Below, piece after piece: positions 1 through 30,070 of a stretch of DNA of 64,000 nucleotides. The DNA is taken from NCBI GenBank assembly GCA_044892505.1, contig CM097884.1, forward strand, positions 160,766,001-160,830,000, in the 5' to 3' direction. A program made the translations under genes and the position numbers. Origin of the DNA: Schmidtea nova (Eukaryota). Numbering within the stretch: the first letter of the stretch is position 1; every line of letters begins with the position of its first letter. The notes beneath the pieces are model-generated. The model worked only from the letters and a program-made list of their open reading frames with translations. It was not told the DNA's origin and did no database searches.

Positions 1-173
1 CAAGCATACATTTGGCTACTGATATGACGCTCAAGATAAAAGTCAATGTCATCATCAGTGAACCAGGCCTTTGGATCACGCACGGAATTTAAATTATTTA
101 CAGTTTTATTACTTGTGCTGTCTGCATCAGTCTCTTTTGAGATTGGGGCAGATATTAACACTGATGCAGGCAC
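1..173 (-). CDS. ORF2 N-terminal fragment of E0 (start of Ulp1-like protease domain), continues off window
   Basis: Matches the first ~57 codons of ORF2 in the other copies (VPASVLISAP...WFTDDDIDFYL...QMYAC). Confidence 0.88.
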   Translation of the reverse strand, partial: MPASVLISAPISKETDADSTSNKTVNNLNSVRDPKAWFTDDDIDFYLERHISSQMYA

Positions 174-179
174 ACACCT

Positions 180-2939
180 TCATTTATTTTTTTGTGTTAC
201 GCGCTTCGGTCTTTTAATAGTTTTGCGATGAATATTAATTATTTCCTCATTTGACGTAGCTGGACCTAAATCAATGTCAGTGGGAAGCAAGCGCTTAAGA
301 CTTTCTCTGTCTTTGTCTGATGTCAATAGAATGTTATCATCTATGTTAGGGGAAGGAGATATTTCTACAGATTCTTCATTAGAATCAACGACATTCTCAA
401 CAGTTTTCACACTATCAATTGTTGTATCGACATTTTCAGCAATCGTCTCAGAATTTACATGTGGTAAAACATATTCAAGTAGTCTCGAGATGTGTACGCT
501 CATACTAGGTGAACAAATTTTCCTACAATATTGAGGAACACGGAAACGTCTGTTGCCATTTAAGAAATATCTCTTATCTCTTACTACAAAAAACACGAGT
601 CTCTTTGCTCTTAAAATCTCATCATCAGTTAGTTCAGATTCAAAATCATTGATCTTACTAGATATTATATTAAGCGCCTTGATTTGATCCGACTTATTTG
701 GAAGAGACTTATCTACAAACTCTAAGAAAGCATTTAACTCAGAAATAGTTTTGGGAGAGATTATGTTATGGATCTTGTCAATCTCTTGAGACAAATTAAC
801 CTGCTTTAGTTTCAGAAGTCTTTCCTGACAACTAGTTTTATAATAAGAACTACTGAGATTCTCGATCATTTCTGGGCCCCATATCTCAATCGTGTCAATG
901 TCCAATGAGTACGAGTTTTCAATATCTGTTATGGAATGCATTAAAAAGCAATTCCTAAGATAGTTTTGAACGTATATATCAAAACTCGGCTTAATAATTA
1001 ATTTTAGGGAATCCCTTAATTTTAAATAATTTAGGTAAAAAATTATGTCAACCAGTTTTTGAGATGAAGTTGGTTGATCAAGAAGAGAACTAAACACATT
1101 GTCATCCTCTGACATCTGAACAAAGTTCAGTAGCCCTAAATTAAATATGATATCGGAGGCACCATCTTCGTGCACAGCGACTGAATTTTCACTATAAATT
1201 TTAATAAATTTGCCCCCTGTAAATGAAATCTGTTCAGGGAATTTATTTTCAGATTTTAATTTTTCTATTAAATTATTTAATGCGTGAGGATTAGCATATG
1301 TGTTTTCAATAAAACACAATTCCTCAATTTCTGGGTGTGATTTAAATAAATTTTGTAATTGCAACCTTGACAATTCAGATGCAGTTTGAGTTGAGAAAAT
1401 TTCATCTGAATCGCAAGTGCTAAGAATATCGAGCATTACAAAATCTCCGTCTAGATATTTAATCTGTGATTTTATTAAAAAGTCAGGGAGCTCTTTTCGC
1501 TGTTTTAATTCGCGAAGAATATTATTAATTTGTATTTCCCTGGACTTTAAATTACTAATAGACACAGTGCCGGCCAGTTTCGACGAAAGGGAACAAAGAA
1601 AACGCTTAATAATTGAAGAAGCCGGGACAAATTTTGTATTTGTATTGTTGGCCTTCAAAATGTTTGATCCAATCAAAAACGTCTTTGTAGAGGATTTTAA
1701 AATATTATTATTTAAAGGGACAACTTTATCAGGCACCAAATTCTGAAAAACACAGATATTATGATTTCTATAAAAGAAACCTTCAAACCCAGCGATGCTT
1801 AGTGGATTTTCCTCTTTTATAATAATTAAAAGGTCATTGTTAATTAAATCAAATTTGTTGCTTGATTCTTTTAATTTCAAAAGTTTGTGAAATTTGGGAA
1901 ATAATCTAAGAAAAGAATTTTTCTCCTTTTTTGTTAATATACGCGGTAAAATATTTTCAAAAATTTCTTTTTTTAATTTAAGATGAGAATTTTTATTTTT
2001 ATTATTATTTCTGAAATTAGAATTTGATTTCATTTTCAAACTTTCCAATTTGAAATTTCGTTTATTTTGAAAGTTCTTATCAGTATTAAAATTATTTTTA
2101 GATTTAATTTCCTGATCATTTGATTTTAAATTAGAAATGTTATTTGCAGTTGAAATTTCGAAATTTTCAAAATTTCGATTGTTTAAATTATCCAATTTAA
2201 TCGCAGGTAAATTAATATTTTCAAAAACAGGTTTAATAATTTTCTTTTTATTTTCATTATTATTATTAATAGTTATATTATAATTTTCCAGCCAATTTCC
2301 ATCGATTGCATAGCTTTCAGGAGTAGATCCATCATCTAGTAGAAGGATCTTTTCAAAATTATTATTTTTATTAAAAAATAAATTTTTGTTATTTAGATTT
2401 TTGTTATTTAAAGTACTTTTTACATTATTATTATTATCTTTATAATCACTTAAATTTTGACTATTCGGCTTTTCTAGTTGAATTGTTCGTTCGTTTTTAG
2501 TCTGTGTAGAATTATTTCTGTAAATTGTCGACTTATTTAATAAAATTTTATGACATGAATAGCAAAGATTGCCTGCACTTTTGTCATTTTTATTTACATT
2601 CAAAGAGTTGTCATACAATTCGCTATTTTTATCTAAATTAGGAATTATTCTAAAATTTTCAATATTAGATTTACAATTAAAAGTAGATAAATTAGCATAT
2701 AAATTACCACGACCAAAACCGGACACACCATTGTCAGAATTACCATTGTGAAAATTACAATTATAATTTAAATTATCATTTAGATTTTTCGAACCAAAAT
2801 TAGATATAGGTTTATTTACAAAATCTTGGTTCGAAACTTCCAAAAATTTAACAATATAATCTAACTTACAGTTATTAGAATAAATCATCCTTTCAAGCTC
2901 TGACAAATTCGCCCCAAATGGCACAAAATTATCCTGCAT
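180..2939 (-). CDS. Retrotransposon ORF1 (919 aa; 15-bp NNKNL duplication allele)
   Basis: True ATG start, long open frame conserved in 7 copies, directly upstream of and in frame with the RT ORF. Confidence 0.9.
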   Translation of the reverse strand: MQDNFVPFGANLSELERMIYSNNCKLDYIVKFLEVSNQDFVNKPISNFGSKNLNDNLNYNCNFHNGNSDNGVSGFGRGNLYANLSTFNCKSNIENFRIIPNLDKNSELYDNSLNVNKNDKSAGNLCYSCHKILLNKSTIYRNNSTQTKNERTIQLEKPNSQNLSDYKDNNNNVKSTLNNKNLNNKNLFFNKNNNFEKILLLDDGSTPESYAIDGNWLENYNITINNNNENKKKIIKPVFENINLPAIKLDNLNNRNFENFEISTANNISNLKSNDQEIKSKNNFNTDKNFQNKRNFKLESLKMKSNSNFRNNNKNKNSHLKLKKEIFENILPRILTKKEKNSFLRLFPKFHKLLKLKESSNKFDLINNDLLIIIKEENPLSIAGFEGFFYRNHNICVFQNLVPDKVVPLNNNILKSSTKTFLIGSNILKANNTNTKFVPASSIIKRFLCSLSSKLAGTVSISNLKSREIQINNILRELKQRKELPDFLIKSQIKYLDGDFVMLDILSTCDSDEIFSTQTASELSRLQLQNLFKSHPEIEELCFIENTYANPHALNNLIEKLKSENKFPEQISFTGGKFIKIYSENSVAVHEDGASDIIFNLGLLNFVQMSEDDNVFSSLLDQPTSSQKLVDIIFYLNYLKLRDSLKLIIKPSFDIYVQNYLRNCFLMHSITDIENSYSLDIDTIEIWGPEMIENLSSSYYKTSCQERLLKLKQVNLSQEIDKIHNIISPKTISELNAFLEFVDKSLPNKSDQIKALNIISSKINDFESELTDDEILRAKRLVFFVVRDKRYFLNGNRRFRVPQYCRKICSPSMSVHISRLLEYVLPHVNSETIAENVDTTIDSVKTVENVVDSNEESVEISPSPNIDDNILLTSDKDRESLKRLLPTDIDLGPATSNEEIINIHRKTIKRPKRVTQKNK

Positions 2940-3294
2940 TAATATTTTAAAAAATTTATTAACCTTTTCAATATCTTTCTTATAAATTTATTATAATGAG
3001 TTATTTAAACAAATTTATATTAAAGGTTTTCAAATTTCGAAATTTACTTTTCCTCGACAAAATCAAACAACGCATGGCAAATGTTTGCCATTTTCAATCA
3101 AATGACAATCTCTTTCACAAATCTCATAGAATTTTGATTTTGTAAAATTATTAATAATTTTTTTTCAAATAATGGTAACGACCTTGGAACGTTTATATTA
3201 ATCCAATTTGTTGAATTTGATTTTGAGTAGAGCAAATTAGTTTCGACAAATTTACAACGTTTACAATCTTATCATGATGAAAGTGAAAAAAATA

Positions 3295-3365
3295 TTCCCT
3301 GACCGGGAGTCGAACCCGGGCCACCTGGGTGAGAGCCAGGAATCCTAACCGCTAGACCATCAGGA
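3295..3365 (-). tRNA. tRNA-Glu(CTC) variant with 1-bp deletion at the 5' acceptor stem (TCC vs TCCC)
   Basis: + strand reads accatcaggatcg instead of accatcagggatcg; real defect or homopolymer error. Confidence 0.7.
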
Positions 3366-3660
3366 TCGATATATGTTTCCAATCTCTAGTTAAAGGTTTT
3401 CGAATTTCGAAATTTACTTTTCCTCGACAAAATCAAACAACGCATGGCAAATGTTTGCCATTTTCAATCAAATGACAATCTCTTTCACAATTCTCATAGA
3501 ATTTTGATTTTGTAAAATTATTAATAATTTTTTTTCAAATAATGGTAACGACCTTGGAACGTTTATATTAATCCAATTTGTTGAATTTGATTTTGAGTAG
3601 AGCAAATTAGTTTCGACAAATTTACAACGTTTACAATCTTATCATGATGATAAGAAAGTG

Positions 3661-3667
3661 AAAAAAA
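3661..3667 (-). terminator. Pol III terminator (T7) 2 nt after the tRNA 3' end; a T7 or T9 run follows every tRNA copy (representative)
   Basis: Minus strand GGGAA-TA-TTTTTTT. Confidence 0.85.
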
Positions 3668-3669
3668 TA

Positions 3670-3741
3670 TTCCCTGACCGGGAGTCGAACCCGGGCCACC
3701 TGGGTGAGAGCCAGGAATCCTAACCGCTAGACCATCAGGGA
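3670..3741 (-). tRNA. tRNA-Glu (anticodon CTC)
   Basis: TCCCTGATGGTCTAGCGGTTAGGATTCCTGGCTCTCACCCAGGTGGCCCGGGTTCGACTCCCGGTCAGGGAA: 7-bp acceptor stem, anticodon stem CCTGG/CCAGG, GTTCGA T-loop, 72 nt, no intron, no encoded CCA. Confidence 0.97.
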
Positions 3742-4037
3742 TCGATATATGTTTCCAATCTCTAGTTAAAGGTTTTCGAATTTCGAAATTTACTTTTCCT
3801 CGACAAAATCAAACAACGCATGGCAAATGTTTGCCATTTTCAATCAAATGACAATCTCTTTCACAATTCTCATAGAATTTTGATTTTGTAAAATTATTAA
3901 TAATTTTTTTTCAAATAATGGTAACGACCTTGGAACGTTTATATTAATCCAATTTGTTGAATTTGATTTTGAGTAGAGCAAATTTGTTTCGACAAATTTA
4001 CAACGTTTACAATCTTATCATGAAAGTGAAAAAAATA

Positions 4038-4109
4038 TTCCCTGACCGGGAGTCGAACCCGGGCCACCTGGGTGAGAGCCAGGAATCCTAACCGCTAGAC
4101 CATCAGGGA
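4038..4109 (-). tRNA. tRNA-Glu(CTC)
   Basis: Same 72-nt sequence. Confidence 0.96.
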
Positions 4110-4413
4110 TCGATATATGTTTCCAATCTCTAGTTAAAGGTTTTCGAATTTCGAAATTTACTTTTCCTCGACAAAATCAAACAACGCATGGCAAATGTTT
4201 GCCATTTTCAATCAAATGACAATCTCTTTTACAAATCTCATAGAATTTTGATTTTGTAAAATTATTAATAATTTTTTTTCAAATATTGGTAACGACCTTG
4301 GAACGTTTATATTAATCCAATTTGTTGAATTTGATTTTGAGTAGAGCAAATTAGTTTCGACAAATTTACAACGTTTACAATCTTATCATGATGATAAGAA
4401 AGTGAAAAAAATA

Positions 4414-4466
4414 TTCCCTGACCGGGAGTCGAACCCGGGCCACCTGGGTGAGAGCCAGGAATCCTA
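4414..4466 (-). pseudogene. tRNA-Glu target remnant (nt 20-72) at the 3' junction of E1
   Basis: + strand ...ccaggaatccta|gtaaacg replaces ...ccaggaatccta|accgctagaccatcaggga. Confidence 0.95.
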
Positions 4467-4997
4467 GTAAACGTTTATTAATTATAATAAATTTTTCAAA
4501 TTTACAATGGGACAATGCTCTACATGGAGCATGCCTTTCATGAAAGATACAGCAAATAAAGAGACAGAATTTCAATGATAGTTAAAATCAAATGTGAGAA
4601 AATAAGGTCTCAATAAATGTTGCTTTTCATAAATGTTCCCTGGCGATGATTTGAAATATTTCATCGGACTGTTTTTCCGGCTTTGCGACATCCTTCAGCC
4701 TATCTTTTCATGTCATGATCACAGTCTTTTTGTTTTCTGAGGAATCCGCAGCAATAAAACTTCTTCACGAGTCAAGGTGTCTAGAGACATTGAGTTTACA
4801 GACGCTAGAATTGGTTCTACTAAATAAATATACAAATATACATATATACATATATAAATCCTCGGACTCGGGCGGAAATAAATCTAAAATAAATTTTATC
4901 TACAAATTAAAAAAAAAGGTTTATACTATATACATTAAAATGGCAATTCTCCGCACAACGAGTGTCTGCATTTTGATCGTGGCATTCATTACAAATC

Positions 4998-7900
4998 TCA
5001 CAAGTCTCTAAGATAACCAGTCGTATGAAAATGCCACCTATTGGCTGAGTGTTTGATATTACTTATCGCACACTGTTTCAAAAGAGGATCGATTTTCTTC
5101 AAAGGTATTCCAACCTTTAAAAGAACATCGAAAGTCAAAGGTGGAATTGATCCTAGAGAACCAATGATACAAGTGAGTAGTTCTACCTTGTAATCAGGTT
5201 TCGCGATTTGAATTGCCTTTCTTAACGATTCGTATTTTAACAGGTTTTCTTTATTTACCTGCTCAAAACTCGAAAGACAATCAATCGGACATTTCATGTC
5301 TACCATGAGAATTCTTTTCCTATTTACGTCGGTGATGATGAGGTCAACTCGCTCTTTAGAGTATGGAACCAACGAACAAGTTTGATCGATAACGACAATA
5401 AGATTCGGATCTGTCAGTTGATCTGTTATCAATTTCAAGCAATCATTGTGTCTTTTTGTTGCAAGTGTTTGATGAACTTTACATGATTGCAAAACATGTG
5501 CCATTGTTTCCTCCTCAGAGTGGCAGCGACGACAAAGTCTTTCTTTTACATTTCGATAAGGTTTAGCTAGAAATGACAATGTATTCGTGCGAGCACGATG
5601 GATGAAATTCCAAGAGAATTCTGACAGATCACTTCGAAAGATTGCTTTATTGATCTTAGGCGAAAGAGTGATTGCTGATGCGATCAAATTACTTTTATTA
5701 CTACTTTGCCATTTGGAAAGATAAGAATCAAAAAGCGTATCATGCAAGATCTTAGAAATAGAATTCCGAAAATCGGGAGTTGCGATCAATGTACCTCGCT
5801 CTTTTGTTGTAATATGAAGCACAGGTTCATTATTTAGGGTTTGAAAGGATATTCTAATGGCATGAATTTTATTCAGGAATTCTACAGATGTTCGCGCTCT
5901 CCGAAAACGTGTTTTCTTTCCATGATGGATGCGCTTGCATTCAATGCCATTTAACCAATCAAAGCTATCCTGAAGAGTTGGATGCTGAATTCCAAGTCGA
6001 GAACTAGTGACAAATTTCAAAGAGTCTGTATTGATCTTTTTTGCATAATTGCAAATGGAAGTAAAAAGTCGAAAAAAGTGCACTATGGTTTGGACATGAT
6101 ATTCGTCAAGCAGGTCAACACAAGAAGCTCCACCATTTTCCGTGGAGTTGTAAAAATATGAAATCTCTGAATTTTCAGGAAGATTCATCATTTTTCTCAA
6201 ATGACTTCTTAATTTACTTGTGTTGTTACCAGTGACATTGCTATTTCCATAAGGGATTGCCAAAGTACTTGTTTTTATTTCCCTCGTTCTAAAAGGAAAG
6301 ATGAGGCGTGAATGTAGAAAAATCTTGTAAGCTTTGAGTTTTTGCCAGCCTAACAAGTCAGAGTTTGCAAGTTTTTTGGCGTCAGATATTACCTTATTTA
6401 GGATATCATAAGGGCTTTGATCAATATCTTCTCCAACTGGGACACCAAGATACTGATAGAACTCGCGAGATAGCAATTTCTTGATTTTGATATTTTCAAT
6501 AGAAATTTCACTATCTATGTGGACCTTAGGAAGTTGAATGTATCCACATTTATCTGGTCGATATACAAAACCTATTTGTGCAGCAGTGTCAACAGCTATA
6601 TCAGTGATTCGTTGCAAGTCACTGACATTTTTTGATATTAAAGCAATGTCGTCTGCGTATGCAAGAATTTGTAACGGAGATGTGCCAATCATGAATGGTT
6701 CTACTGTCGATCGGCTGACAGCTTCAAGTACCGGATTAATCGCAATGGCGAATAAAATCATTGAAATTGGGCATCCTTGTTTCACCCCTTGTCTAATAGC
6801 TATGTTTGAAGTGAGAACTGGTCCGCAACTGTACATAGAAGATGTGTCGGAATAAAGTAGTTGCAATATCGTAGTGAACTCATCACATACGCCAATATAT
6901 CGAAGGACAGACCACATGTATTCATGAGGGACACTACCAAATGCGTCTTTAATGTCAAGCCATGCAATCGATATTGGACAATCTTTACTATATTTAGAGT
7001 GTTCCAAAGCAGCTGTCAGTATGGAATTGTGTTCAACACAACCATCGTGTTCTGAACCTCCCTTTTGTCCAATGTGTAGAATGTTGTTCAAATCTACCCA
7101 AGTAGTAAGACGTCTAGCCAGTATCGAAGCAAAAACCTTATAAATCACTGACAATAAGGCAATCGGCCTCCAAGATGACACATTGTCGTATTTGTCATTC
7201 TTGTCAGGTTTCGGAATCAAAAGAGTCCTGAAAGATTTCCAATCATTTGGAACGATTTTATCGGTTATTATTCGGTTAAAAAGAAATGCAAGGAGATCCC
7301 CATCGGGATCCAAAAGACGCAAATCTCTATATTGAATACCATCAGAACCAGGAGATGTGTTGTCAGCTTTTTTAAGCTCAAACAATACCTCGACTGGCAA
7401 TATTCGATCGAGTTTCAAAGGCTTTTGTGATTTTTTACAGAATTGAAGGACAGAATTCCAGCATTTGGATATAGGTAATGCGTGACTATAATATTTAATA
7501 ATGTCTTCAATTGAAGGCCTTACATTTATTTTAAAATTATCAATGATTTTACTGACGGCTCTTTTCATTTCCGTCATAAATAGAGAAATAATTTGAGTTT
7601 TATTTAATTTTGAGTTATCTCTCTTATTTTTCCCTAAATAAAGTTTAAAAGTTGATTTCTTACGATCAGGAAATTCTTTGATAATTATGTCAATGATCTC
7701 ATTGACAGTTGAAAATTTAATTGCTATTAAAAGGTCTTTGATTTTAATTTTGCGTTGAATTAAATTTAATTTAACTAGTTCCTTTTCATTCCCTTTTGGT
7801 ATTATTTTAGTGTTAATTTTATTTGTTTTATTGGCAACTGGAACTAAGGAACTAATAACATTTCCAATATCGCGCAGGTTGATGTTTTCAAGGGATATGT

Positions 7901-9578
7901 CACAAGCATAATGTTTGATAAATGCGCATATAAGTATTTTACAGAGAAGACCTGAACCTCGCACATCATGTGGACAAATACCGTTTGTCAATGCACGACC
8001 AGGGGTTTCTCGTAATTCATTAATTTTTTCAATGATGGTTTTACTCATTGAGAGATAATTAATACCGGATAAAAGAGTTGTTGGATTCAAAATATAATGT
8101 GCATCGGTATTGTAATCTATTATTAATAAGTTTTCCCTTGATTTTTGGGGGGTTATAACTGAAAAAATGACTTGTGCTTTAACAAGACATTCATAATTTA
8201 GAAATGTACTGATGTATTGGGTACAATCATCGAGGATCGCCGTTGACATTGTTGCGTTTAACAAGATAAAGGTCGGTGATAATTTTAGATTGTTAAAATA
8301 AGTTGTTAGAATTTGATCGTCAAGCTTCCCATTTATTGTGTCTAAGTTTAAACAGATTTCATTTACATGTTTTAGTTTCAATGATTTTAGTGATTTTGTA
8401 GTATCTTCAAGATTGGCAATGTTATTAAAAATTAACTTTTCTAATAAAGTAATGAAATATGATGCCATTATGATTGGTTCAACGGAAAATATTGGTGAGA
8501 AACTGATCTCGTGATCAATGATAAAGTTAATCTTTCTCTGAAGGAAAAATTGATTCAAATAATCGGTCATATTTTCTCCTATACCGATTAATCTTTCTTT
8601 TACAGTTTGAAAGCCTGTAGTAAAAATGTGACTTTTTCCGAGTTGAACAGAGAACAGAAATAAGCACCAAGAGTTGTTATTTGGAATAATACTTATTACA
8701 TGTTCAATGTATTGAAATTGTTTGAAAGTCACGTTTTCAATAATGAAAGCATTATTTTGCGCAACTATATTTGACGTTAATTCGGGAGAGAGAACCATTA
8801 TATTAGTGTAGGTTGAAAACCATTTATCAATCAATGTTGATATGCATGGGTTTTCGTTATATAGCATGATGTTATTTGCTTTGCTTTTATATCTAACTGC
8901 TTTCTTGAAGTTGATCAAGTTCATAAAGTTTGACTTTGGCGGACCACCTCCAATTGTTTTTGATGTAATAGTGGTACAGTTAGCATTATTATTGAAAACA
9001 TCTTCCCTTATACTATTTACAAAATTATCAGGAAAGTATTCCCAAACTTGACTAATTATCAATGCGTAAGCGCAGACAAAAGGCCCACAATCAAAGTCGT
9101 TATTTTGATATTCAAGTTTTATATGGGGATTATATGTTACCGCCGCTTTAAGTTTAAACAATTTGTTTAAAGCCATATTTATTTTAAGGGCGCTCGTTTT
9201 GTTGATAAATTTATTTTTATTTTCAAGAATTGGATCAATGTAGTACGAAAGTAAGGATGATTTACAGTACACGAACAAGATCCAATGTGCGTTTGATATA
9301 TTTAATGGGCAAAGTATTATTTGCGCGTTAAACACCGTTTCTGGAAAGGAAATTATATTTTCCTCAAGATTTGCAAGTAAAATGCTAACAATATAGCATT
9401 TAATGCAAGCATACATTTGGCTACTGATATGACGCTCAAGATAAAAGTCAATGTCATCATCAGTGAACCAGGCCTTTGGATCACGCACTGAACTTAAATT
9501 ATTTACAGTTTTATTACTTGTGCTGTCTGCATCAGTCTCTTTTGAGATTGGGGCAGATATTAAGACTGATGCAGGCAC
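4998..9578 (-). CDS. ORF2: Ulp1/C48-like protease + reverse transcriptase + CCHC finger + restriction-like endonuclease
   Basis: HW/D/Q/DCG protease motifs; SPGSDG, WRPIALL, WLDIKDAFGSV, GVKQGCPIS, YADD (6659-6648), YLGV; CRRC-x8-H-x4-C (5534-5481); RVD...VDMK. The called start is GTG, not ATG. Confidence 0.95.
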   Translation of the reverse strand: MPASVLISAPISKETDADSTSNKTVNNLSSVRDPKAWFTDDDIDFYLERHISSQMYACIKCYIVSILLANLEENIISFPETVFNAQIILCPLNISNAHWILFVYCKSSLLSYYIDPILENKNKFINKTSALKINMALNKLFKLKAAVTYNPHIKLEYQNNDFDCGPFVCAYALIISQVWEYFPDNFVNSIREDVFNNNANCTTITSKTIGGGPPKSNFMNLINFKKAVRYKSKANNIMLYNENPCISTLIDKWFSTYTNIMVLSPELTSNIVAQNNAFIIENVTFKQFQYIEHVISIIPNNNSWCLFLFSVQLGKSHIFTTGFQTVKERLIGIGENMTDYLNQFFLQRKINFIIDHEISFSPIFSVEPIIMASYFITLLEKLIFNNIANLEDTTKSLKSLKLKHVNEICLNLDTINGKLDDQILTTYFNNLKLSPTFILLNATMSTAILDDCTQYISTFLNYECLVKAQVIFSVITPQKSRENLLIIDYNTDAHYILNPTTLLSGINYLSMSKTIIEKINELRETPGRALTNGICPHDVRGSGLLCKILICAFIKHYACDISLENINLRDIGNVISSLVPVANKTNKINTKIIPKGNEKELVKLNLIQRKIKIKDLLIAIKFSTVNEIIDIIIKEFPDRKKSTFKLYLGKNKRDNSKLNKTQIISLFMTEMKRAVSKIIDNFKINVRPSIEDIIKYYSHALPISKCWNSVLQFCKKSQKPLKLDRILPVEVLFELKKADNTSPGSDGIQYRDLRLLDPDGDLLAFLFNRIITDKIVPNDWKSFRTLLIPKPDKNDKYDNVSSWRPIALLSVIYKVFASILARRLTTWVDLNNILHIGQKGGSEHDGCVEHNSILTAALEHSKYSKDCPISIAWLDIKDAFGSVPHEYMWSVLRYIGVCDEFTTILQLLYSDTSSMYSCGPVLTSNIAIRQGVKQGCPISMILFAIAINPVLEAVSRSTVEPFMIGTSPLQILAYADDIALISKNVSDLQRITDIAVDTAAQIGFVYRPDKCGYIQLPKVHIDSEISIENIKIKKLLSREFYQYLGVPVGEDIDQSPYDILNKVISDAKKLANSDLLGWQKLKAYKIFLHSRLIFPFRTREIKTSTLAIPYGNSNVTGNNTSKLRSHLRKMMNLPENSEISYFYNSTENGGASCVDLLDEYHVQTIVHFFRLFTSICNYAKKINTDSLKFVTSSRLGIQHPTLQDSFDWLNGIECKRIHHGKKTRFRRARTSVEFLNKIHAIRISFQTLNNEPVLHITTKERGTLIATPDFRNSISKILHDTLFDSYLSKWQSSNKSNLIASAITLSPKINKAIFRSDLSEFSWNFIHRARTNTLSFLAKPYRNVKERLCRRCHSEEETMAHVLQSCKVHQTLATKRHNDCLKLITDQLTDPNLIVVIDQTCSLVPYSKERVDLIITDVNRKRILMVDMKCPIDCLSSFEQVNKENLLKYESLRKAIQIAKPDYKVELLTCIIGSLGSIPPLTFDVLLKVGIPLKKIDPLLKQCAISNIKHSANRWHFHTTGYLRDL

Positions 9579-9584
9579 ACACCT

Positions 9585-12329
9585 TCATTTATTTTTTTGT
9601 GTTACGCGCTTCGGTCTTTTAATAGTTTTACGATGAATATTAATTATTTCCTCATTTGACGTAGCTGGACTTAAATCAATGTCAGTGGGAAGCAAGCGCT
9701 TAAGACTTTCTCTGTCTTTGTCTGATGTCAATAGAATGTTATCATCTATGTTAGGGGAAGGAGATATTTCTACAGATTCTTCATTAGAATCAACGACATT
9801 CTCAACAGTTTTCACACTATCAATTGTTGTACCGACATTTTCAGCAATAGTCTCAGAATTTACATGTGGTAAAACATATTCAAGTAGTCTCGAAATGTGT
9901 ACGCTCATACTAGGTGTACAAATTTTCCTACAATATTGAGGAACACGGAAACGTCTGTTGCCATTTAAGAAATATCTCTTATCTCTTATTACAAAAAACA
10001 CGAGTCTCTTTGCTCTTAAAATCTCATCATCGGTTAGTTCAGATTCAAAATCATTGATCTTACTAGATATTATATTAAGCGCCTTGATTTGATCCGACTT
10101 ATTTGGAAGAGACTTATCTACAAACTCTAAGAAAGCATTTAACTCAGAAATAGTTTTGGGAGAGATTATGTTATGGATCTTGTCAATCTCTTGAGACAAA
10201 TTAACCTGCTTTAGTTTCAGAAGTCTTTCCTGACAACTAGTTTTATAATAAGAACTACTGAGATTCTCGATCATTTCTGGGCCCCATATCTCAATCGTGT
10301 CAATGTCCAATGAGTACGAGTTTTCAATATCTGTTATGGAATGCATTAAAAAGCAATTCCTAAGATAGTTTTGAACGTATATATCAAAACTCGGCTTAAT
10401 AATTAATTTTAGGGAATCCCTTAATTTTAAATAATTTAGGTAAAAAATTATGTCAACCAGTTTTTGAGATGAAGTTGGTTGATCAAGAAGAGAACTAAAC
10501 ACATTGTCATCCTCTGACATCTGAACAAAGTTCAGTAGCCCTAAATTAAACATGATATCGGAGGCACCATCTTCGTGCACAGCGACTGAATTTTCACTAT
10601 AAATTTTAATAAATTTGCCCCCTGTAAATGAAATCTGTTCAGGGAATTTATTTTCAGATTTTAATTTTTCTATTAAATTATTTAATGCGTGAGGATTAGC
10701 ATATGTGTTTTCAATAAAACACAATTCCTCAATTTCTGGGTGTGATTTAAATAAATTTTGTAATTGCAACCTTGACAATTCAGATGCAGTTTGAGTTGAG
10801 AAAATTTCATCTGAATCGCAAGTGCTAAGAATATCGAGCATTACAAAATCTCCGTCTAGATATTTAATCTGTGATTTTATTAAAAAGTCAGGGAGCTCTT
10901 TTCGCTGTTTTAATTCGCGGAGAATATTATTAATTTGTATTTCCCTGGACTTTAAATTACTAATAGACACAGTGCCGGCCAGTTTCGACGAAAGGGAACA
11001 AAGAAAACGCTTAATAATTGAAGAAGCCGGGACAAATTTCGTATTTGTATTGTTGGCCTTCAAAATGTTTGATCCAATCAAAAACGTCTTTGTAGAGGAT
11101 TTTAAAATATTATTATTTAAAGGGACAACTTTATCAGGCACCAAATTCTGAAAAACACAGATATTATGATTTCTATAAAAGAAACCTTCAAACCCAGCGA
11201 TGCTTAGTGGATTTTCCTCTTTTATAATAATTAAAAGGTCATTGTTAATTAAATCAAATTTGTTGCTTGATTCTTTTAATTTCAAAAGTTTGTGAAATTT
11301 GGGAAATAATCTAAGAAAAGAATTTTTCTCCTTTTTTGTTAATATACGCGGTAAAATATTTTCAAAAATTTCTTTTTTTAATTTAAGATGAGAATTTTTA
11401 TTTTTATTATTATTTCTGAAATTAGAATTTGATTTCATTTTCAAACTTTCCAATTTGAAATTTCGTTTATTTTGAAAGTTCTTATCAGTATTAAAATTAT
11501 TTTTAGATTTAATTTCCTGATCATTTGATTTTAAATTAGAAATGTTATTTGCAGTTGAAATTTCGAAATTTTCAAAATTTCGATTGTTTAAATTATCCAA
11601 TTTAATCGCAGGTAAATTAATATTTTCAAAAACAGGTTTAATAATTTTCTTTTTATTTTCATTATTATTATTAATAGTTATATTATAATTTTCCAGCCAA
11701 TTTCCATCGATTGCATAGCTTTCAGGAGTAGATCCATCATCTAGTAGAAGGATCTTTTCAAAATTATTATTTTTATTAAAAAATAAATTTTTGTTATTTA
11801 AAGTACTTTTTACATTATTATTATTATCTTTATAATCACTTAAATTTTGACTATTCGGCTTTTCTAGTTGAATTGTTCGTTCGTTTTTAGTCTGTGTAGA
11901 ATTATTTCTGTAAATTGTCGACTTATTTAATAAAATTTTATGACATGAATAGCAAAGATTGCCTGCACTTTTGTCATTTTTATTTACATTCAAAGAGTTG
12001 TCATACAATTCGCTATTTTTATCTAAATTAGGAATTATTCTAAAATTTTCAATATTAGATTTACAATTAAAAGTAGATAAATTAGCATATAAATTACCAC
12101 GACCAAAACCGGACACACCATTGTCAGAATTACCATTGTGAAAATTACAATTATAATTTAAATTATCATTTAGATTTTTCGAACCAAAATTAGATATAGG
12201 TTTATTTACAAAATCTTGGTTCGAAACTTCCAAAAATTTAACAATATAATCTAACTTACAGTTATTAGAATAAATCATCCTTTCAAGCTCTGACAAATTC
12301 GCCCCAAATGGCACAAAATTATCCTGCAT
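9585..12329 (-). CDS. Retrotransposon ORF1 (914 aa)
   Basis: Intact ORF, same as other copies. Confidence 0.9.
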   Translation of the reverse strand: MQDNFVPFGANLSELERMIYSNNCKLDYIVKFLEVSNQDFVNKPISNFGSKNLNDNLNYNCNFHNGNSDNGVSGFGRGNLYANLSTFNCKSNIENFRIIPNLDKNSELYDNSLNVNKNDKSAGNLCYSCHKILLNKSTIYRNNSTQTKNERTIQLEKPNSQNLSDYKDNNNNVKSTLNNKNLFFNKNNNFEKILLLDDGSTPESYAIDGNWLENYNITINNNNENKKKIIKPVFENINLPAIKLDNLNNRNFENFEISTANNISNLKSNDQEIKSKNNFNTDKNFQNKRNFKLESLKMKSNSNFRNNNKNKNSHLKLKKEIFENILPRILTKKEKNSFLRLFPKFHKLLKLKESSNKFDLINNDLLIIIKEENPLSIAGFEGFFYRNHNICVFQNLVPDKVVPLNNNILKSSTKTFLIGSNILKANNTNTKFVPASSIIKRFLCSLSSKLAGTVSISNLKSREIQINNILRELKQRKELPDFLIKSQIKYLDGDFVMLDILSTCDSDEIFSTQTASELSRLQLQNLFKSHPEIEELCFIENTYANPHALNNLIEKLKSENKFPEQISFTGGKFIKIYSENSVAVHEDGASDIMFNLGLLNFVQMSEDDNVFSSLLDQPTSSQKLVDIIFYLNYLKLRDSLKLIIKPSFDIYVQNYLRNCFLMHSITDIENSYSLDIDTIEIWGPEMIENLSSSYYKTSCQERLLKLKQVNLSQEIDKIHNIISPKTISELNAFLEFVDKSLPNKSDQIKALNIISSKINDFESELTDDEILRAKRLVFFVIRDKRYFLNGNRRFRVPQYCRKICTPSMSVHISRLLEYVLPHVNSETIAENVGTTIDSVKTVENVVDSNEESVEISPSPNIDDNILLTSDKDRESLKRLLPTDIDLSPATSNEEIINIHRKTIKRPKRVTQKNK

Positions 12330-12690
12330 TAATATTTTAAAAAATTTATTAACCTTTTCAATATCTTTCTTATAAATTTATTATAATGAGTTATTTAAAC
12401 AAATTTATATTAAAGGTTTTCAAATTTCGAAATTTACTTTTCCTCGACAAAATCAAACAACGCATGGCAAATGTTTGCCATTTTCAATCAAATGACAATC
12501 TCTTTCACAAATCTCATAGAATTTTGATTTTGTAAAATTATTAATAATTTTTTTTCAAATAATGGTAACGACCTTGGAACGTTTATATTAATCCAATTTG
12601 TTGAATTTGATTTTGAGTAGAGCAAATTAGTTTCGACAAATTTACAACGTTTACAATCTTATCATGATGATAAGATTGTAAAAAAAAATA

Positions 12691-12762
12691 TTCCCTGACC
12701 GGGAGTCGAACCCGGGCCACCTGGGTGAGAGCCAGGAATCCTAACCGCTAGACCATCAGGGA
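12691..12762 (-). tRNA. tRNA-Glu(CTC)
   Basis: 72-nt consensus copy, T9 trailer variant. Confidence 0.96.
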
Positions 12763-13067
12763 TCGATATATGTTTCCAATCTCTAGTTAAAGGTTTTCGA
12801 ATTTCGAAATTTACTTTTCCTCGACAAAATCAAACAACGCATGGCAAATGTTTGCCATTTTCAATCAAATGACAATCTCTTTCACAATTCTCATAGAATT
12901 TTGATTTTGTAAAATTATTAATAATTTTTTTTCAAATAATGGTAACGACCTTGGAACGTTTATATTAATCCAATTTGTTGAATTTGATTTTGAGTAGAGC
13001 AAATTAGTTTCGACAAATTTACAACGTTTACAATCTTATCATGATGATAAGATTGTAAAAAAAAATA

Positions 13068-13120
13068 TTCCCTGACCGGGAGTCGAACCCGGGCCACCTG
13101 GGTGAGAGCCAGGAATCCTA
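13068..13120 (-). pseudogene. tRNA-Glu target remnant (nt 20-72) at the 3' junction of E2
   Basis: Same junction atccta|gtaaacg. Confidence 0.95.
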
Positions 13121-13651
13121 GTAAACGTTTATTATTTATAATAAATTTTCCAAATTTACAATGGGACAATGCTCTACATGGAGCATGCCTTTCATGAAAG
13201 ATACAGCAAATAAAGAGACAGAATTTCAATGATAGTTAAAATCAAATGTGAGAAAATAAGATCTCAATAAATGTTGCTTTTCATAAATGTTCCCTGGCGA
13301 TGATTTGAAATATTTCATCGGACTGTTTTTCCGGCTTTGCGACATCCTTCAGCCTATCTTTTTATGTCATGATCACAGTCTTTTTGTTTTCTGAGGAATC
13401 CGCAGCAATAAAACTTCTTCACGAGTCAAGGTGTCTAGAGACATTGAGTTTACAGACTCTAGAATTGGTTCTACTAAATAAATATACAAATATACATATA
13501 TACATATATAAATCCTCGGACTCGGGCGGAAAAAAATCTAAAATAAATTTTATCTACAAATTAAAAAAAAAGGTTTATACTATATACATTAAAATGGCAA
13601 TTCTCCGCACAACGAGTGTCTGCATTTTGATCGTGGCATTCATTACAAATC

Positions 13652-16600
13652 TCACAAGTCTCTAAGATAACCAGTCGTATGAAAATGCCACCTATTGGCT
13701 GAGTGTTTGATATTACTTATCGCACACTGTTTCAAAAGAGGATCGATTTTCTTCAAAGGTATTCCAACCTTTAAAAGAACATCGAAAGTCAAAGATGGAA
13801 TTGATCCTAGAGAACCAATGATACAAGTGAGTAGTTCTACCTTGTAATCAGGTTTCGCGATTTGAATTGCCTTTCTTAACGATTCGTATTTTAACAGGTT
13901 TTCTTTATTTACCTGCTCAAAACTCGAAAGACAATCAATCGGACATTTCATGTCTACCATGAGAATTCTTTTCCTATTTACGTCGGTGATGATGAGGTCA
14001 ACTCGCTCTTTAGAGTATGGAACCAACGAACAAGTTTGATCGATAACGACAATAAGATTCGGATCTGTCAGTTGATCTGTTATCAATTTCAAGCAATCAT
14101 TGTGTCTTTTTGTTGCAAGTGTTTGATGAACTTTACATGATTGCAAAACATGTGCCATTGTTTCCTCCTCAGAGTGGCAGCGACGACAAAGTCTTTCTTT
14201 TACATTTCGAAAAGGTTTAGCTAGAAATGACAATGTATTCGTGCGAGCACGATGGATGAAATTCCAAGAGAATTCTGACAGATCACTTCGAAAGATTGCT
14301 TTATTGATCTTAGGCGAAAGAGTGATTGCTGATGCGATCAAATTACTTTTATTACTACTTTGCCATTTGGAAAGATAAGAATCAAAAAGCGTATCATGCA
14401 AGATCTTAGAAATAGAATTCCGAAAATCGGGAGTTGCGATCAATGTACCTCGCTCTTTTGTTGTAATATGAAGCACAGGTTCATTATTTAGGGTTTGAAA
14501 CGATATCCTAATGGCATGAATTTTATTCAGGAATTCTACAGATGTTCGCGCTCTCCGAAAACGTGTTTTCTTTCCATGATGGATGCGCTTGCATTCAATG
14601 CCATTTAACCAATCAAAGCTATCCTGAAGAGTTGGATGCTGAATTCCAAGTCGAGAACTAGTGACAAATTTCAAAGAGTCTGTATTGATCTTTTTTGCAT
14701 AATTGCAAATGGAAGTAAAAAGTCGAAAAAAGTGCACTATGGTTTGGACATGATATTCGTCAAGCAGGTCAACACAAGAAGCTCCACCATTTTCCGTGGA
14801 GTTATAAAAATATGAAATCTCTGAATTTTCAGGAAGATTCATCATTTTTCTCAAATGACTTCTCAATTTACTTGTGTTGTTACCAGTGACATTGCTATTT
14901 CCATAAGGGATTGCCAAAGTACTTGTTTTTATTTCCCTCGTTCTAAAAGGAAAGATGAGGCGTGAATGTAGAAAAATCTTGTAAGCTTTGAGTTTTTGCC
15001 AGCCTAACAAGTCAGAGTTTGCAAGTTTTTTGGCGTCAGATATTACCTTATTTAGGATATCATAAGGGCTTTGATCAATATCTTCTCCAACTGGGACACC
15101 AAGATACTGATAGAACTCGCGAGATAGCAATTTCTTGATTTTGATATTTTCAATAGAAATTTCACTATCTATGTGGACCTTAGGAAGTTGAATGTATCCA
15201 CATTTTTCTGGTCGATATACAAAACCTATTTGTGCAGCAGTGTCAACAGCTATATCAGTGATTCGTTGCAAGTCACTGACATTTTTTGATATTAAAGCAA
15301 TGTCGTCTGCGTATGCAAGAATTTGTAACGGAGATGTGCCAATCATGAATGGTTCTACTGTCGATCGGCTGACAGCTTCAAGTACCGGATTAATCGCAAT
15401 GGCGAATAAAATCATTGAAATTGGGCATCCTTGTTTCACCCCTTGTCTAATAGCTATGTTTGAAGTGAGAACTGGTCCGCAACTGTACATAGAAGATGTG
15501 TCGGAATAAAGTAGTTGCAATATCGTAGTGAACTCATCACATACGCCAATATATCGAAGGACAGACCACATGTATTCATGAGGGACACTACCAAATGCGT
15601 CTTTAATGTCAAGCCATGCAATCGATATTGGACAATCTTTACTATATTTAGAGTGTTCCAAAGCAGCTGTCAGTATGGAATTGTGTTCAACACAGCCATC
15701 GTGTTCTGAACCTCCCTTTTGTCCAATGTGTAGAATGTTGTTCAAATCTACCCAAGTAGTAAGACGTCTAGCCAATATCGAAGCAAAAACCTTATAAATC
15801 ACTGACAATAAGGCAATCGGCCTCCAAGATGACACATTATCGTATTTGTCATTCTTGTCAGGTTTCGGAATCAAAAGAGTCCTGAAAGATTTCCAATCAT
15901 TTGGAACGATTTTATCGGTTATTATTCGGTTAAAAAGAAATGCAAGGAGATCCCCATCGGGATCCAAAAGACGCAAATCTCTATATTGAATACCATCAGA
16001 ACCAGGAGATGTGTTGTCAGCTTTTTTAAGCTCAAACAATACCTCGACTGGCAATATTCGATCGAGTTTCAAAGGCTTTTGTGATTTTTTACAGAATTGA
16101 AGGACAGAATTCCAGCATTTGGATATAGGTAATGCGTGACTATAATATTTAATAATGTCTTCAATTGAAGGCCTTACATTTATTTTAAAATTATCAATGA
16201 TTTTACTGACGGCTCTTTTCATTTCCGTCATAAATAGAGAAATAATTTGAGTTTTATTTAATTTTGAGTTATCTCTCTTATTTTTCCCTAAATAAAGTTT
16301 AAAAGTTGATTTCTTACGATCAGGAAATTCTTTGATAATTATGTCAATGATCTCATTGACAGTTGAAAATTTAATTGCTATTAAAAGGTCTTTGATTTTA
16401 ATTTTGCGTTGAATTAAATTTAATTTAACTAGTTCCTTTTCATTCCCTTTTGGTATTATTTTAGTGTTAATTTTATTTGTTTTATTGGCAACTGGAACTA
16501 AGGAACTAATAACATTTCCAATATCGCGCAGGTTGATGTTTTCAAGGGATATGTCACAAGCATAATGTTTGATAAATGCGCATATAAGTATTTTACAGAG

Positions 16601-18232: not shown

Positions 18233-18238
18233 ACACCT

Positions 18239-20983: not shown

Positions 20984-21344
20984 TAATATTTTAAAAAATT
21001 TATTAACCTTTTCAATATCTTTCTTATAAATTTATTATAATGAGTTATTTAAACAAATTTATATTAAAGGTTTTCAAATTTCGAAATTTACTTTTCCTCG
21101 ACAAAATCAAACAACGCATGGCAAATGTTTGCCATTTTCAATCAAATGACAATCTCTTTCACAAATCTCATAGAATTTTGATTTTGTAAAATTATTAATA
21201 ATTTTTTTTCAAATAATGGTAACGACCTTGGAACGTTTATATTAATCCAATTTGTTGAATTTGATTTTGAGTAGAGCAAATTAGTTTCGACAAATTTACA
21301 ACGTTTACAATCTTATCATGATGATAAGATTGTAAAAAAAAATA

Positions 21345-21416
21345 TTCCCTGACCGGGAGTCGAACCCGGGCCACCTGGGTGAGAGCCAGGAATCCTAACC
21401 GCTAGACCATCAGGGA
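21345..21416 (-). tRNA. tRNA-Glu(CTC)
   Basis: 72-nt consensus copy. Confidence 0.96.
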
Positions 21417-21721
21417 TCGATATATGTTTCCAATCTCTAGTTAAAGGTTTTCGAATTTCGAAATTTACTTTTCCTCGACAAAATCAAACAACGCATGGCA
21501 AATGTTTGCCATTTTCAATCAAATGACAATCTCTTTCACAATTCTCATAGAATTTTGATTTTGTAAAATTATTAATAATTTTTTTTCAAATAATGGTAAC
21601 GACCTTGGAACGTTTATATTAATCCAATTTGTTGAATTTGATTTTGAGTAGAGCAAATTAGTTTCGACAAATTTACAACGTTTACAATCTTATCATGATG
21701 ATAAGATTGTAAAAAAAAATA

Positions 21722-21774
21722 TTCCCTGACCGGGAGTCGAACCCGGGCCACCTGGGTGAGAGCCAGGAATCCTA
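21722..21774 (-). pseudogene. tRNA-Glu target remnant (nt 20-72) at the 3' junction of E3
   Basis: Same junction. Confidence 0.95.
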
Positions 21775-26886: not shown

Positions 26887-26892
26887 ACACCT

Positions 26893-29998: not shown

Positions 29999-30070
29999 TT
30001 CCCTGACCGGGAGTCGAACCCGGGCCACCTGGGTGAGAGCCAGGAATCCTAACCGCTAGACCATCAGGGA
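29999..30070 (-). tRNA. tRNA-Glu(CTC)
   Basis: 72-nt consensus copy. Confidence 0.96.

What the first reader, a model, noticed from the sequence alone, without database searches (positions are those of the whole stretch)
4414..12409. Site-specific RLE retrotransposon that inserts inside tRNA-Glu(CTC) genes of a tandem array
Seen: all six visible 3' junctions fall between nt 19 and 20 of the tRNA gene (GCGGT|TAGGATT), in the same orientation as the gene, and each insertion destroys that gene. ORF2 has RT, CCHC and an R-x-D...D-x-K nuclease. Established: RLE-clade elements target multicopy genes (R2/R4/R5 rRNA, NeSL spliced leader, Utopia U2 snRNA). A Ulp1 protease N-terminal to RT is typical of NeSL/Utopia, and planarian R5 has two ORFs. 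Most tRNA-associated retroelements (Ty1, Ty3, Dictyostelium TRE) insert beside, not inside, the gene. Inference: a NeSL/R5-related family using a tRNA array as its niche. I recall, unverified, that some planarian NeSL-clade families in Repbase have tRNA targets, so novelty must be checked.
Basis: partly seen in the sequence, partly recalled or inferred. Interest (0 to 1): 0.85.

Follow-up and report, generated by a model that had tools for sequence, protein, structure and literature searches.

The report
tRNA-Glu-targeting RLE retrotransposon in tRNA array
A young, apparently intact jumping gene of the R2/NeSL type sits six times at the same base inside tRNA-Glu genes of a tandem array; this kind of tRNA-gene-specific element was already reported from planarians in 2015, so it is a clean new example and not a new kind.

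Summary
A 376-bp tandem array of tRNA-Glu(CTC) genes on the minus strand holds six full elements of 7.9 kb, plus the 5' part of a seventh. All lie in the gene's orientation. Every 3' junction is at tRNA nt 19|20.

ORF2 has a Ulp1-type protease, RT, a CCHC knuckle and a PD-(D/E)xK nuclease, all with invariant catalytic residues, and it matches solved R2 proteins.

- **5' junction.** It lies 24 nt upstream of the gene, so 43 bp of target are missing. All seven 5' flanks share one SNP, which suggests a target-derived leader copied with the element.
- **Copy history.** At least one copy (E2) is an unequal-crossover product. Differences between copies are strongly biased to synonymous changes (omega about 0.09), which argues for several real retrotransposition events.
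- **Novelty.** It is limited. Kojima & Jurka 2015 reported planarian NeSL-clade LIN families specific for tRNA-Glu (LIN25_SM) and tRNA-Arg (LIN15_SM). A 25-nt stretch of the LIN25_SM tail matches our tails with 1-2 mismatches.
- **Relatives.** Relatives at 42-44% ORF2 identity sit in the D-loop of tRNA-Val and tRNA-Phe.
- **Extra.** ORF1 and ORF2 are in one frame, split by a UGA that is followed by a covarying stem-loop. This points to programmed readthrough.

The parts
3295..63937 (-). Tandem array of tRNA-Glu(CTC) genes, 376-bp unit; 30 intact genes and 6 interrupted units in the window
4467..12409 (-). Element copy E1 (7943 bp), full length, both ORFs open
4414..4466 (-). Remnant of the target tRNA-Glu gene (nt 20-72) at the 3' junction of E1; A box lost
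12410..12431 (-). Upstream spacer flank carrying the C-to-T difference (at 12422) that is shared by all seven 5' flanks and absent from all 29 uninterrupted units; candidate target-derived leader of the element
9585..12329 (-). ORF1 (914 aa from the first ATG, TGA stop included); lineage-specific protein with no Pfam, PDB or fold match
9585..9587 (-). Single in-frame TGA between ORF1 and ORF2
9519..9581 (-). Conserved stem-loop just 3' of the TGA (12-13 bp main stem plus outer GUGC/GCAC helix); candidate readthrough stimulator
4998..9584 (-). ORF2 (1528 codons open after the TGA): protease, RT, CCHC and RLE
9051..9344 (-). Ulp1/C48 protease domain (ORF2 residues 79-176); H98, D115, Q158 and C164 invariant
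6441..7217 (-). Reverse transcriptase domain (ORF2 residues 788-1046; YADD at 974-977)
5481..5534 (-). CCHC zinc knuckle (C1349, C1352, H1361, C1366)
5292..5453 (-). Restriction-like endonuclease core (R1376-H1377, R1410-x-D1412, D1427-x-K1429)
4467..4997 (-). 3' UTR with no poly(A) tail. It ends ...AATAAACGTTTAC. The stretch 4469-4493, which stops 2 nt before the element's end, matches a 25-nt stretch of the published LIN25_SM tail with 2 mismatches.
4515..4532 (-). Small 3' UTR hairpin (6-bp stem, loop CATGTA) with compensatory changes in relatives
13121..21063 (-). Copy E2, both ORFs open; mosaic of E1 (5' half) and E3 (3' half)
21775..29717 (-). Copy E3, both ORFs open
31176..39118 (-). 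Copy E4, both ORFs open; directly downstream of E5 with only a partial unit between them
39452..47411 (-). Copy E5 (7960 bp), both ORFs open; ORF1 five codons longer
49249..57192 (-). Copy E6 (7944 bp); ORF1 open, ORF2 broken by one frameshift
1..3019 (-). Copy E7, 5' part only (runs off the window); ORF1 open; same 5' junction

Best explanation
This is a young, probably still active, site-specific non-LTR retrotransposon with a restriction-like endonuclease. It belongs to the NeSL clade in the broad sense, most likely the platyhelminth R5/LIN lineage, and is close to LIN25_SM.

**Insertion (inferred by analogy with R2).** The ORF2 protein binds the element's 3' UTR and nicks the tRNA-Glu gene in the D-loop at nt 19|20. 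It then copies the RNA from that nick by target-primed reverse transcription.

**5' end (inferred).** The RNA carries a short leader derived from the spacer upstream of the target, at least 13 nt and at most about 100 nt. The cDNA end anneals to the spacer of the target unit. Every insertion therefore gets the same 5' junction, loses the same 43 bp, and inherits the leader's SNP.

**Expression (inferred from sequence).** ORF1 is translated to the UGA. A fraction of ribosomes read through, helped by the conserved stem-loop, and make an ORF1-ORF2 fusion. The Ulp1-type protease at the start of ORF2 probably cuts this fusion.

**After insertion (shown).** Unequal crossing-over in the array reshuffles and multiplies copies.
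For: **Shown**
- Six identical 3' junctions at nt 19|20 and seven identical 5' junctions.
- RT, CCHC and RLE with invariant catalytic residues and no APE domain. ORF2 matches solved R2 proteins in the RT region (E 7e-45) and in the CCHC/RLE region.
- Both ORFs are open in 5 of 6 full copies, which are 99.5-99.9% identical.
- Differences between copies are biased to synonymous changes. In ORF2 there are 20 synonymous and 7 nonsynonymous variable codons (omega about 0.09, p 7e-9). In ORF1 there are 6 and 5 (p 0.011).
- One SNP is shared by all seven upstream flanks, while the rest of those spacers falls into at least 4 haplotypes.
- Relatives sit in the D-loop of tRNA-Val (nt 14|15) and tRNA-Phe.
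- A 25-nt stretch of the LIN25_SM tail matches all six tails (0 expected by chance).
- An in-frame UGA is present in 11 of 11 elements. The stem-loop is 90.7% paired, 6 of 12 pairs carry compensatory changes, slid controls give 21-36%, and the fold z-score is -4.2.
- The first ATG of ORF2 lies at codon 3 to 283. In 10 of the 11 elements it is downstream of invariant residues.

**Precedent**
- R2 RNAs that keep upstream target sequence give uniform 5' junctions and propagate junction variants (PMC3774820).
- The UGA-CGG / UGA-CUA context with a stem-loop starting about +12 is a known readthrough signal (PMC13517186).
Against: - No copy outside this window could be examined, because the family is absent from the protein collections (best hit 60%). 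Genome-wide specificity is therefore untested.
- The uniform 5' junction, the linked SNP and the lack of 5'-truncated copies would also fit amplification of a single insertion by recombination. E2 is such a product.
- No ribozyme or significant structure was found at the 5' junction, so how a leader-bearing RNA would be made is unknown.
- No recognisable DNA-binding domain was found.
- RT phylogeny against named NeSL, R5, LIN and Utopia references could not be run.
Confidence: 0.8

Rival explanations
1. A single ancient insertion into one tRNA-Glu unit was multiplied purely by unequal crossing-over or segmental duplication within the array. On this view there is no repeated site-specific retrotransposition here.
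For: - All seven 5' junctions and the SNP 12 nt upstream are identical.
- E1-E3 form an 8654-bp higher-order repeat with identical flanks.
- E2 is exactly the E1/E3 mosaic that a crossover predicts.
- There are no 5'-truncated copies.
Against: - Differences between copies are strongly synonymous-biased (omega about 0.09, p 7e-9). Neutral post-duplication decay would not produce this.
- Upstream and downstream flanks fall into several haplotypes within about 55-100 nt of the junctions.
- E1 and E3 share flanks yet are the most divergent pair.
- Relatives in other samples show the same D-loop habit in other tRNAs.
Confidence: 0.12
2. The element includes the whole upstream partial unit (tRNA nt 20-72 plus spacer) as its own 5' segment. 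Insertion at nt 19|20 would then rebuild an intact tRNA gene at its 5' side and delete nothing.
For: - In a tandem array a 43-bp deletion cannot be told from a 333-bp duplication by geometry alone.
- Every element is preceded by an intact tRNA or, for E4, by a partial unit.
- In relative L003 the flanks overlap by about 68 bp of the repeat unit.
Against: The upstream units differ by three indel haplotypes that match the local array variants, although the element bodies are 99.5-99.9% identical. Only the site 12 nt from the junction is linked to the element.
Confidence: 0.05
3. Assembly artefact: one or two real copies were expanded by mis-assembly of a repetitive region.
For: The copies are nearly identical, with very regular spacing of 8654 bp.
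Against: There are 53 substitution columns with structured, shared, synonymous-biased patterns, plus two length variants. Flank haplotypes differ. The window contains no Ns.
Confidence: 0.03

Closest known systems
LIN25_SM (Schmidtea mediterranea; NeSL clade, R5/LIN lineage; Kojima & Jurka 2015, PMC4640811)
   Same: - It is reported as specific for tRNA-Glu genes.
- It inserts in the gene's orientation.
- Its A/T-rich tail has no poly(A).
- A 25-nt stretch of that tail, taken from S6 Fig, matches all six tails here with 1-2 mismatches.
   Different: - The published junction, read from a machine-read figure, is in tRNA-Glu(TTC) near nt 4|5, and only 1 of 4 copies shown is in a tRNA. Here the target is tRNA-Glu(CTC) at nt 19|20 in 6 of 6 copies.
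- The host species of the window is unknown.
LIN15_SM (tRNA-Arg) and NeSL-1_TV (tRNA-Pro), same paper
   Same: They are RLE elements inserted inside tRNA genes, which shows that the habit is established in this clade.
   Different: They target other tRNAs. No sequence comparison was possible.
NeSL-1 of nematodes and Utopia-1_TSP
   Same: Both have a Ulp1-like cysteine protease N-terminal to RT, with CCHC and RLE C-terminal to it, and both target multicopy small-RNA genes.
   Different: - The Utopia paper describes Utopia families as generally encoding one protein, with N-terminal zinc fingers. Here there are two ORFs split by an in-frame UGA and no N-terminal zinc finger.
- Their targets are spliced-leader and U2 genes.
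R2 (28S rDNA)
   Same: - ORF2 matches solved R2 proteins in the RT and CCHC/RLE regions.
- Both live in a tandem-array niche.
- Uniform 5' junctions explained by upstream target sequence on the RNA have an R2 precedent.
   Different: - R2 has one ORF, N-terminal ZF/Myb domains, an HDV-like ribozyme and no protease.
- Here no ribozyme was found, and there is a protease, an ORF1 and a 43-bp target loss.
Dada DNA transposons; Ty1/Ty3 and Dictyostelium TRE
   Same: All are associated with tRNA genes as a safe niche.
   Different: - Dada is a DNA transposon.
- Ty and TRE insert beside tRNA genes by way of Pol III factors, not inside the gene by a sequence-specific nuclease. This last point is from established knowledge and was not tested here.

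Membership tests
RLE-bearing non-LTR retrotransposons (R2 group in the broad sense) | Reverse transcriptase of non-LTR type | tested here: met
   RVT_1 E 3.8e-26. R2 structures 9nl2, 9nl3, 9dou and 8gh6 are matched at E 7e-45 to 5e-23. YADD is invariant.
RLE-bearing non-LTR retrotransposons (R2 group in the broad sense) | CCHC motif followed by a PD-(D/E)xK restriction-like endonuclease C-terminal to RT; no APE domain | tested here: met
   C1349, C1352, H1361 and C1366 are invariant, as are R1410-x-D1412 and D1427-x-K1429. This region aligns to the R2 CCHC/RLE region. There is no Exo_endo_phos hit.
RLE-bearing non-LTR retrotransposons (R2 group in the broad sense) | Sequence-specific insertion into a repeated target | tested here: met
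   Six of six 3' junctions are at tRNA-Glu nt 19|20. This covers the window only; the genome-wide pattern is untested.
NeSL clade, R5/LIN lineage | RT domain clusters with R5/LIN, NeSL and Utopia in a phylogeny | not testable with these tools
   Repbase and GenBank reference sequences cannot be fetched.
NeSL clade, R5/LIN lineage | Ulp1-like cysteine protease N-terminal to RT (described for NeSL and Utopia-1_TSP) | tested here: met
   Peptidase_C48 E 1.8e-6. H98, D115, Q158 and C164 are invariant in 12 sequences.
NeSL clade, R5/LIN lineage | Platyhelminth host | not testable with these tools
   The window holds only the array and the elements. The relatives come from unlabelled Logan and ENA assemblies. 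A planarian host is only inferred, from the match to the LIN25_SM tail.
LIN25_SM (same family) | High nucleotide identity over most of the element length | not testable with these tools
   Only a tail of about 43 nt is printed in S6 Fig. A 25-nt stretch of it matches with 1-2 mismatches.
LIN25_SM (same family) | Same target and same insertion position | tested here: inconclusive
   Both target tRNA-Glu. The published copy is in the TTC isoacceptor with the flank starting near nt 5, while here it is CTC at nt 19|20. The published figure was read by machine and shows a single tRNA-flanked copy.

The most novel reading that the evidence does not exclude
A whole clade of two-ORF RLE retrotransposons expresses its RT protein as an ORF1-ORF2 fusion. 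It does so by programmed UGA readthrough, using a type-II-like context and a covarying 3' stem-loop. It then processes the fusion with its own Ulp1-type protease. This would be a Gag-Pol-like strategy in a LINE-like element. The clade has also switched repeatedly between Pol III-transcribed targets: the D-loops of tRNA-Glu, Val and Phe, and perhaps 7SL-linked or other small-RNA arrays. The switching would occur through the poorly conserved region between protease and RT. I found no report of such a readthrough signal in non-LTR elements in the papers searched, but that search was shallow.
Probability: 0.45. Interest if true: 0.6.

Novelty: new member of a known kind. Interest (0 to 1): 0.4.

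Why it matters
tRNA-gene-specific RLE elements have so far been documented by one sentence and a supplementary figure. This window gives complete, nearly identical, open copies in their native array. That fixes the insertion site to the base and shows the fate of the target: 43 bp and the A box are lost.

The window also shows how retrotransposition and unequal crossing-over together shape a tRNA array. It exposes features that can be studied by sequence alone:
- a conserved readthrough signal;
- an intact protease;
- a conserved 3' UTR hairpin;
- a variable putative targeting region.

Site-specific RLE proteins are of current interest as models for targeted insertion, so a family with different, short, well-defined DNA targets is a useful comparative set.

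Tried and rejected
**Searches that found nothing**
- Rfam scan of the element, and of ten related loci, for ribozymes found nothing beyond tRNA and one 7SL hit.
- Folding the 5' junction region gave no significant structure (z -0.44).
- Zinc-finger patterns and Pfam at lenient thresholds on ORF2 residues 170-740 and on ORF1 gave nothing.
- For ORF1, the word-index search was empty and the PDB sequence search was empty. The full HMMER scan found only 12 relatives. The AF2 model (pLDDT 71.6) had no PDB fold match (best E 0.23).
- A search for close copies or fragments of ORF2 in the protein collections, meant to test specificity elsewhere, found nothing closer than 60%.
- A paper search for the sample accessions of the relatives, meant to learn their hosts, gave no hits.
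- The R5 paper (PubMed 12777502) is not held.
- MAFFT plus RNAalifold on 110-nt tails put the 3' hairpin out of register. I redid this on exact 24-nt segments.

**Rejected explanations**
- Dada-like DNA transposon: rejected because RT and RLE are present.
- An element that rebuilds the tRNA gene: rejected because the upstream units have differing haplotypes.

**Not done**
- I did not scan the metagenome or prokaryote-genome DNA collections. The protein results made a hit to this family very unlikely.

- The script printed open-stretch lengths for copy E6, from which the place of its frameshift could be bounded.
Full report
**1. What is in the sequence.** The window (64 kb, no Ns, about 32% G+C) is a tandem array of tRNA-Glu(CTC) genes on the minus strand with a 376-bp unit. 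ARAGORN intact genes. Searching for tRNA nt 20 onward finds 36 units. In six of them the sequence before nt 20 is ...AAACGTTTAC instead of tRNA nt 1-19.

The six bodies are 7943, 7943, 7943, 7943, 7960 and 7944 bp long, all on the minus strand. These are E1 4467-12409, E2 13121-21063, E3 21775-29717, E4 31176-39118, E5 39452-47411 and E6 49249-57192. The 5' part of a seventh copy (E7) fills 1-3019.

Chance is no issue here.

**2. The 5' side.** In all seven copies it is CCTTTAA|TATAAATTTG, 24 nt upstream of the tRNA start. Each insertion is thus accompanied by the loss of 43 bp: 24 nt of flank plus tRNA nt 1-19, which includes the A box.

All seven upstream flanks also carry a T where all 29 uninterrupted units have a C, 12 nt from the junction. 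The rest of those same spacers belongs to at least four haplotypes that match the local array variants. The next informative site, about 100 nt upstream, is not linked to the element.

The simplest reading is that the element's RNA carries 13 to about 100 nt of spacer-derived leader that is copied at each round. This has a documented precedent. R2 RNAs that retain upstream 28S sequence give uniform 5' junctions, and junction deletions or substitutions are then propagated (Eickbush et al. 2013, PMC3774820).

I found no ribozyme (Rfam) and no significant fold at the junction (z -0.44). How such an RNA would be made is therefore open.

**3. Coding capacity.** ORF2 carries the following features:
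- Peptidase_C48 at residues 79-176, RVT_1 at 788-1046 and a weak zf-RVT hit.
- It matches the solved R2 proteins 9nl2, 9nl3, 9dou and 8gh6 in the RT region (E 7e-45 for the best). It also matches in the CCHC/RLE region.
- In an alignment with eleven relatives of 34-51% identity (A4), several residue sets are invariant. They are the protease residues H98, D115, Q158 and C164; YADD at 974-977; C1349, C1352, H1361 and C1366; and R1410-x-D1412 with D1427-x-K1429.
- There is no APE domain and no N-terminal C2H2 finger.
- The stretch between protease and RT is the least conserved part and has no Pfam match. This is where R2-type proteins hold their DNA-binding modules (established knowledge), so it is a plausible seat of target choice. 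That is an inference.

ORF1 (914 aa) has no Pfam or PDB match. It has only 12 relatives among 1.84 billion representatives. It is homologous to the ORF1 of the related elements. An AF2 model (pLDDT 71.6) shows three repeated alpha/beta modules and a helical domain, but has no fold match.

**4. State of the copies.** The copies are 99.5-99.9% identical. E1-E5 have both ORFs open. In E6, ORF2 is broken by one frameshift and nothing else. E7's ORF1 is open.

**5. Independent insertions or array dynamics?** Both processes are visible.

Evidence for recombination:
- E1, E2 and E3 share identical flanks and form an 8654-bp higher-order repeat.
- E2 shares 12 variants with E1 in its 5' half and 8 with E3 in its 3' half. 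An unequal crossover between E3 and E1 predicts exactly this pattern for the middle copy.

Evidence for repeated retrotransposition:
- The differences between copies are not neutral. In ORF2 there are 20 synonymous and 7 nonsynonymous variable codons (omega about 0.09, binomial p 7e-9). In ORF1 there are 6 and 5 (p 0.011).
- Decay after duplication of a single insertion would give omega near 1. The copies therefore descend from lineages that diverged while under selection for function, that is, from several retrotransposition events.
- E1 and E3 have the same flanks but are the most divergent pair (36 differences).

I cannot give the exact number of independent events.

**6. Relatives.** The nearest ORF2 proteins are at most 60% identical. 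They come from unlabelled Logan and ENA assemblies, and nearly all have C48 plus RT. Ten encoding contigs were read. Their flanks show:
- **L005 (P0008).** The tail is followed by tRNA-Val from nt 15, and then by three intact tRNA-Val genes.
- **L006 (P0010).** The tail is followed by a tRNA-Phe(GAA) remnant that starts in the D-loop.
- **L001 (P0001).** The contig ends 10 nt after the tail, in a D-arm-like string.
- **L003 (P0006).** The element is flanked on both sides by an unknown 211-bp tandem repeat, with the ORF1 ATG directly at the 5' junction.
- **L004 (P0007).** The 3' part of a 7SL RNA gene lies upstream.

Insertion into the D-loop region of a tRNA gene, in the gene's orientation, is therefore a habit of the clade, with different tRNAs in different lineages.

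**7. Expression signals noticed.** In the window and in all ten relatives, ORF1 and ORF2 are in the same frame and separated by a single TGA.
- The next codon is CGN in 7 elements, CTA in 1, AGR in 2 (the window has AGG) and TGT in 1.
- A 12-bp stem starts 10 nt after the stop. It is 90.7% paired over 11 sequences, 6 of 12 pairs carry compensatory changes, and slid controls give 21-36%.
- In the window this stem folds at -25.6 kcal/mol with z -4.2.
- The first in-frame ATG of ORF2 lies at codon 3 to 283. In 10 of the 11 elements it is downstream of invariant residues.
- UGA-CGG or UGA-CUA with a stem-loop starting near +12 is the known type II readthrough signal (review PMC13517186).

I infer programmed readthrough that gives an ORF1-ORF2 fusion. 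The adjacent protease, whose catalytic residues are invariant, probably cleaves it.

A small 3' UTR hairpin (4515-4532) has a 6-bp stem that is 83% paired. Four of its 6 pairs carry compensatory changes, against slid controls of at most 47%. It rests on only six sequences. It may be part of what the RT recognises. This is weak evidence.

**8. Comparison with what is known.** Kojima & Jurka 2015 (PMC4640811) state that planarian LIN families related to NeSL are specific for 28S rDNA (LIN9/24/26_SM), tRNA-Arg (LIN15_SM) and tRNA-Glu (LIN25_SM). They also state that NeSL-1_TV is specific for tRNA-Pro, and that target specificity has diversified in the R5/LIN lineage of platyhelminths.

Their S6 Fig, held as machine-read text, shows LIN25_SM tails. 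A 25-nt stretch of one tail matches all six tails here with 1-2 mismatches, where none is expected by chance.

There are also differences. The one tRNA-flanked LIN25_SM copy shown is in tRNA-Glu(TTC) with the flank starting near nt 5. Here the gene is tRNA-Glu(CTC) and the junction is at nt 19|20.

The full LIN25_SM sequence, R5 and NeSL references could not be fetched. Family identity and RT phylogeny are therefore untested, and the host species is unknown. The match to the LIN25_SM tail is the only pointer to a planarian host, and that is only an inference.

**9. Verdict.** The kind is already known, so I file this as a new, or newly well-resolved, member of the tRNA-targeting R5/LIN group.

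The points that go beyond the literature I could read are:
- the base-exact D-loop site, seen in several lineages;
- the uniform 43-bp target loss with a propagated flank SNP;
- the interplay of insertion and crossover in the array;
- the conserved UGA readthrough signal next to an intact protease.

**10. Limits and slips.** Two slips:
- I recalled some tRNA and spliced-leader strings from memory in my reasoning. They were unused.
- One search printed open-stretch lengths for E6 that bound the place of its frameshift. They are not repeated here.

Noticed in passing
window 9519-9587 (-); L001-L010 at the ORF1/ORF2 boundary: ORF1 and ORF2 are in one frame, split by a single TGA, in 11 of 11 elements. 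The TGA is followed by a covarying 12-bp stem-loop, and 8 of 11 have a type-II-like context (TGA-CGN or TGA-CTA). This is a candidate for programmed readthrough that would give an ORF1-ORF2 fusion next to a Ulp1-type protease.
   Followed up: yes
window 12422 and the equivalent site in the six other 5' flanks: A C-to-T difference 12 nt upstream of every 5' junction is absent from all 29 uninterrupted units. The rest of the upstream spacers has at least 4 haplotypes.
   Followed up: partly
window 13121-21063 (E2) with E1 and E3: E2 is a mosaic, E1-like in its 5' half and E3-like in its 3' half, and all three copies have identical flanks. This is the product expected from unequal crossing-over. 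The 8654-bp spacing is a higher-order repeat.
   Followed up: yes
window 4515-4532 (-); L001, L004, L005, L006, L010 3' UTRs: A small hairpin about 50-70 nt from the 3' end has the loop CATGNN (CAGGCT in L005) and compensatory stem changes. The evidence rests on only six sequences.
   Followed up: partly
window 39452-47411 (E5) and 1-3019 (E7): E5 and E7 share an in-frame length variant that makes ORF1 five codons longer. This is a subfamily marker shared by two copies that are far apart in the array.
   Followed up: no
L003:1-140 and L003:7515-8223: A related element (P0006, 45% ORF2 identity) is flanked on both sides by an unknown ~211-bp tandem repeat with no Rfam match. Its ORF1 ATG sits directly at the 5' junction, as if the repeat supplied the 5' UTR.
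   Followed up: partly
L004:1-115: The 3' part of a metazoan 7SL (SRP) RNA gene (60.5 bits) lies about 200 nt upstream of another related element (P0007). Its 3' junction is not on the contig, so its target is unknown.
   Followed up: no
L005:7043-8315: A related element (P0008) is inserted at nt 14|15 of a tRNA-Val gene. It is followed by three intact tRNA-Val genes with different anticodons (AAC, CAC, TAC), which form a mixed isoacceptor cluster.
   Followed up: partly
window 3295-3366 and 61985-62058 (-): Two array members are variant tRNA genes. One has a 1-nt deletion at the start of the acceptor stem, just upstream of E7. The other is called at 74 nt with the anticodon at position 35.
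   Followed up: no
window spacer units at 12743, 13120, 21397, 21774, 30051, 30428, 57526: A spacer variant just after the tRNA terminator (the TTAAT type) occurs only in units next to or near elements. It is absent from the 17 units of the uninterrupted stretch 57902-63918, so the array has local haplotype blocks.
   Followed up: partly
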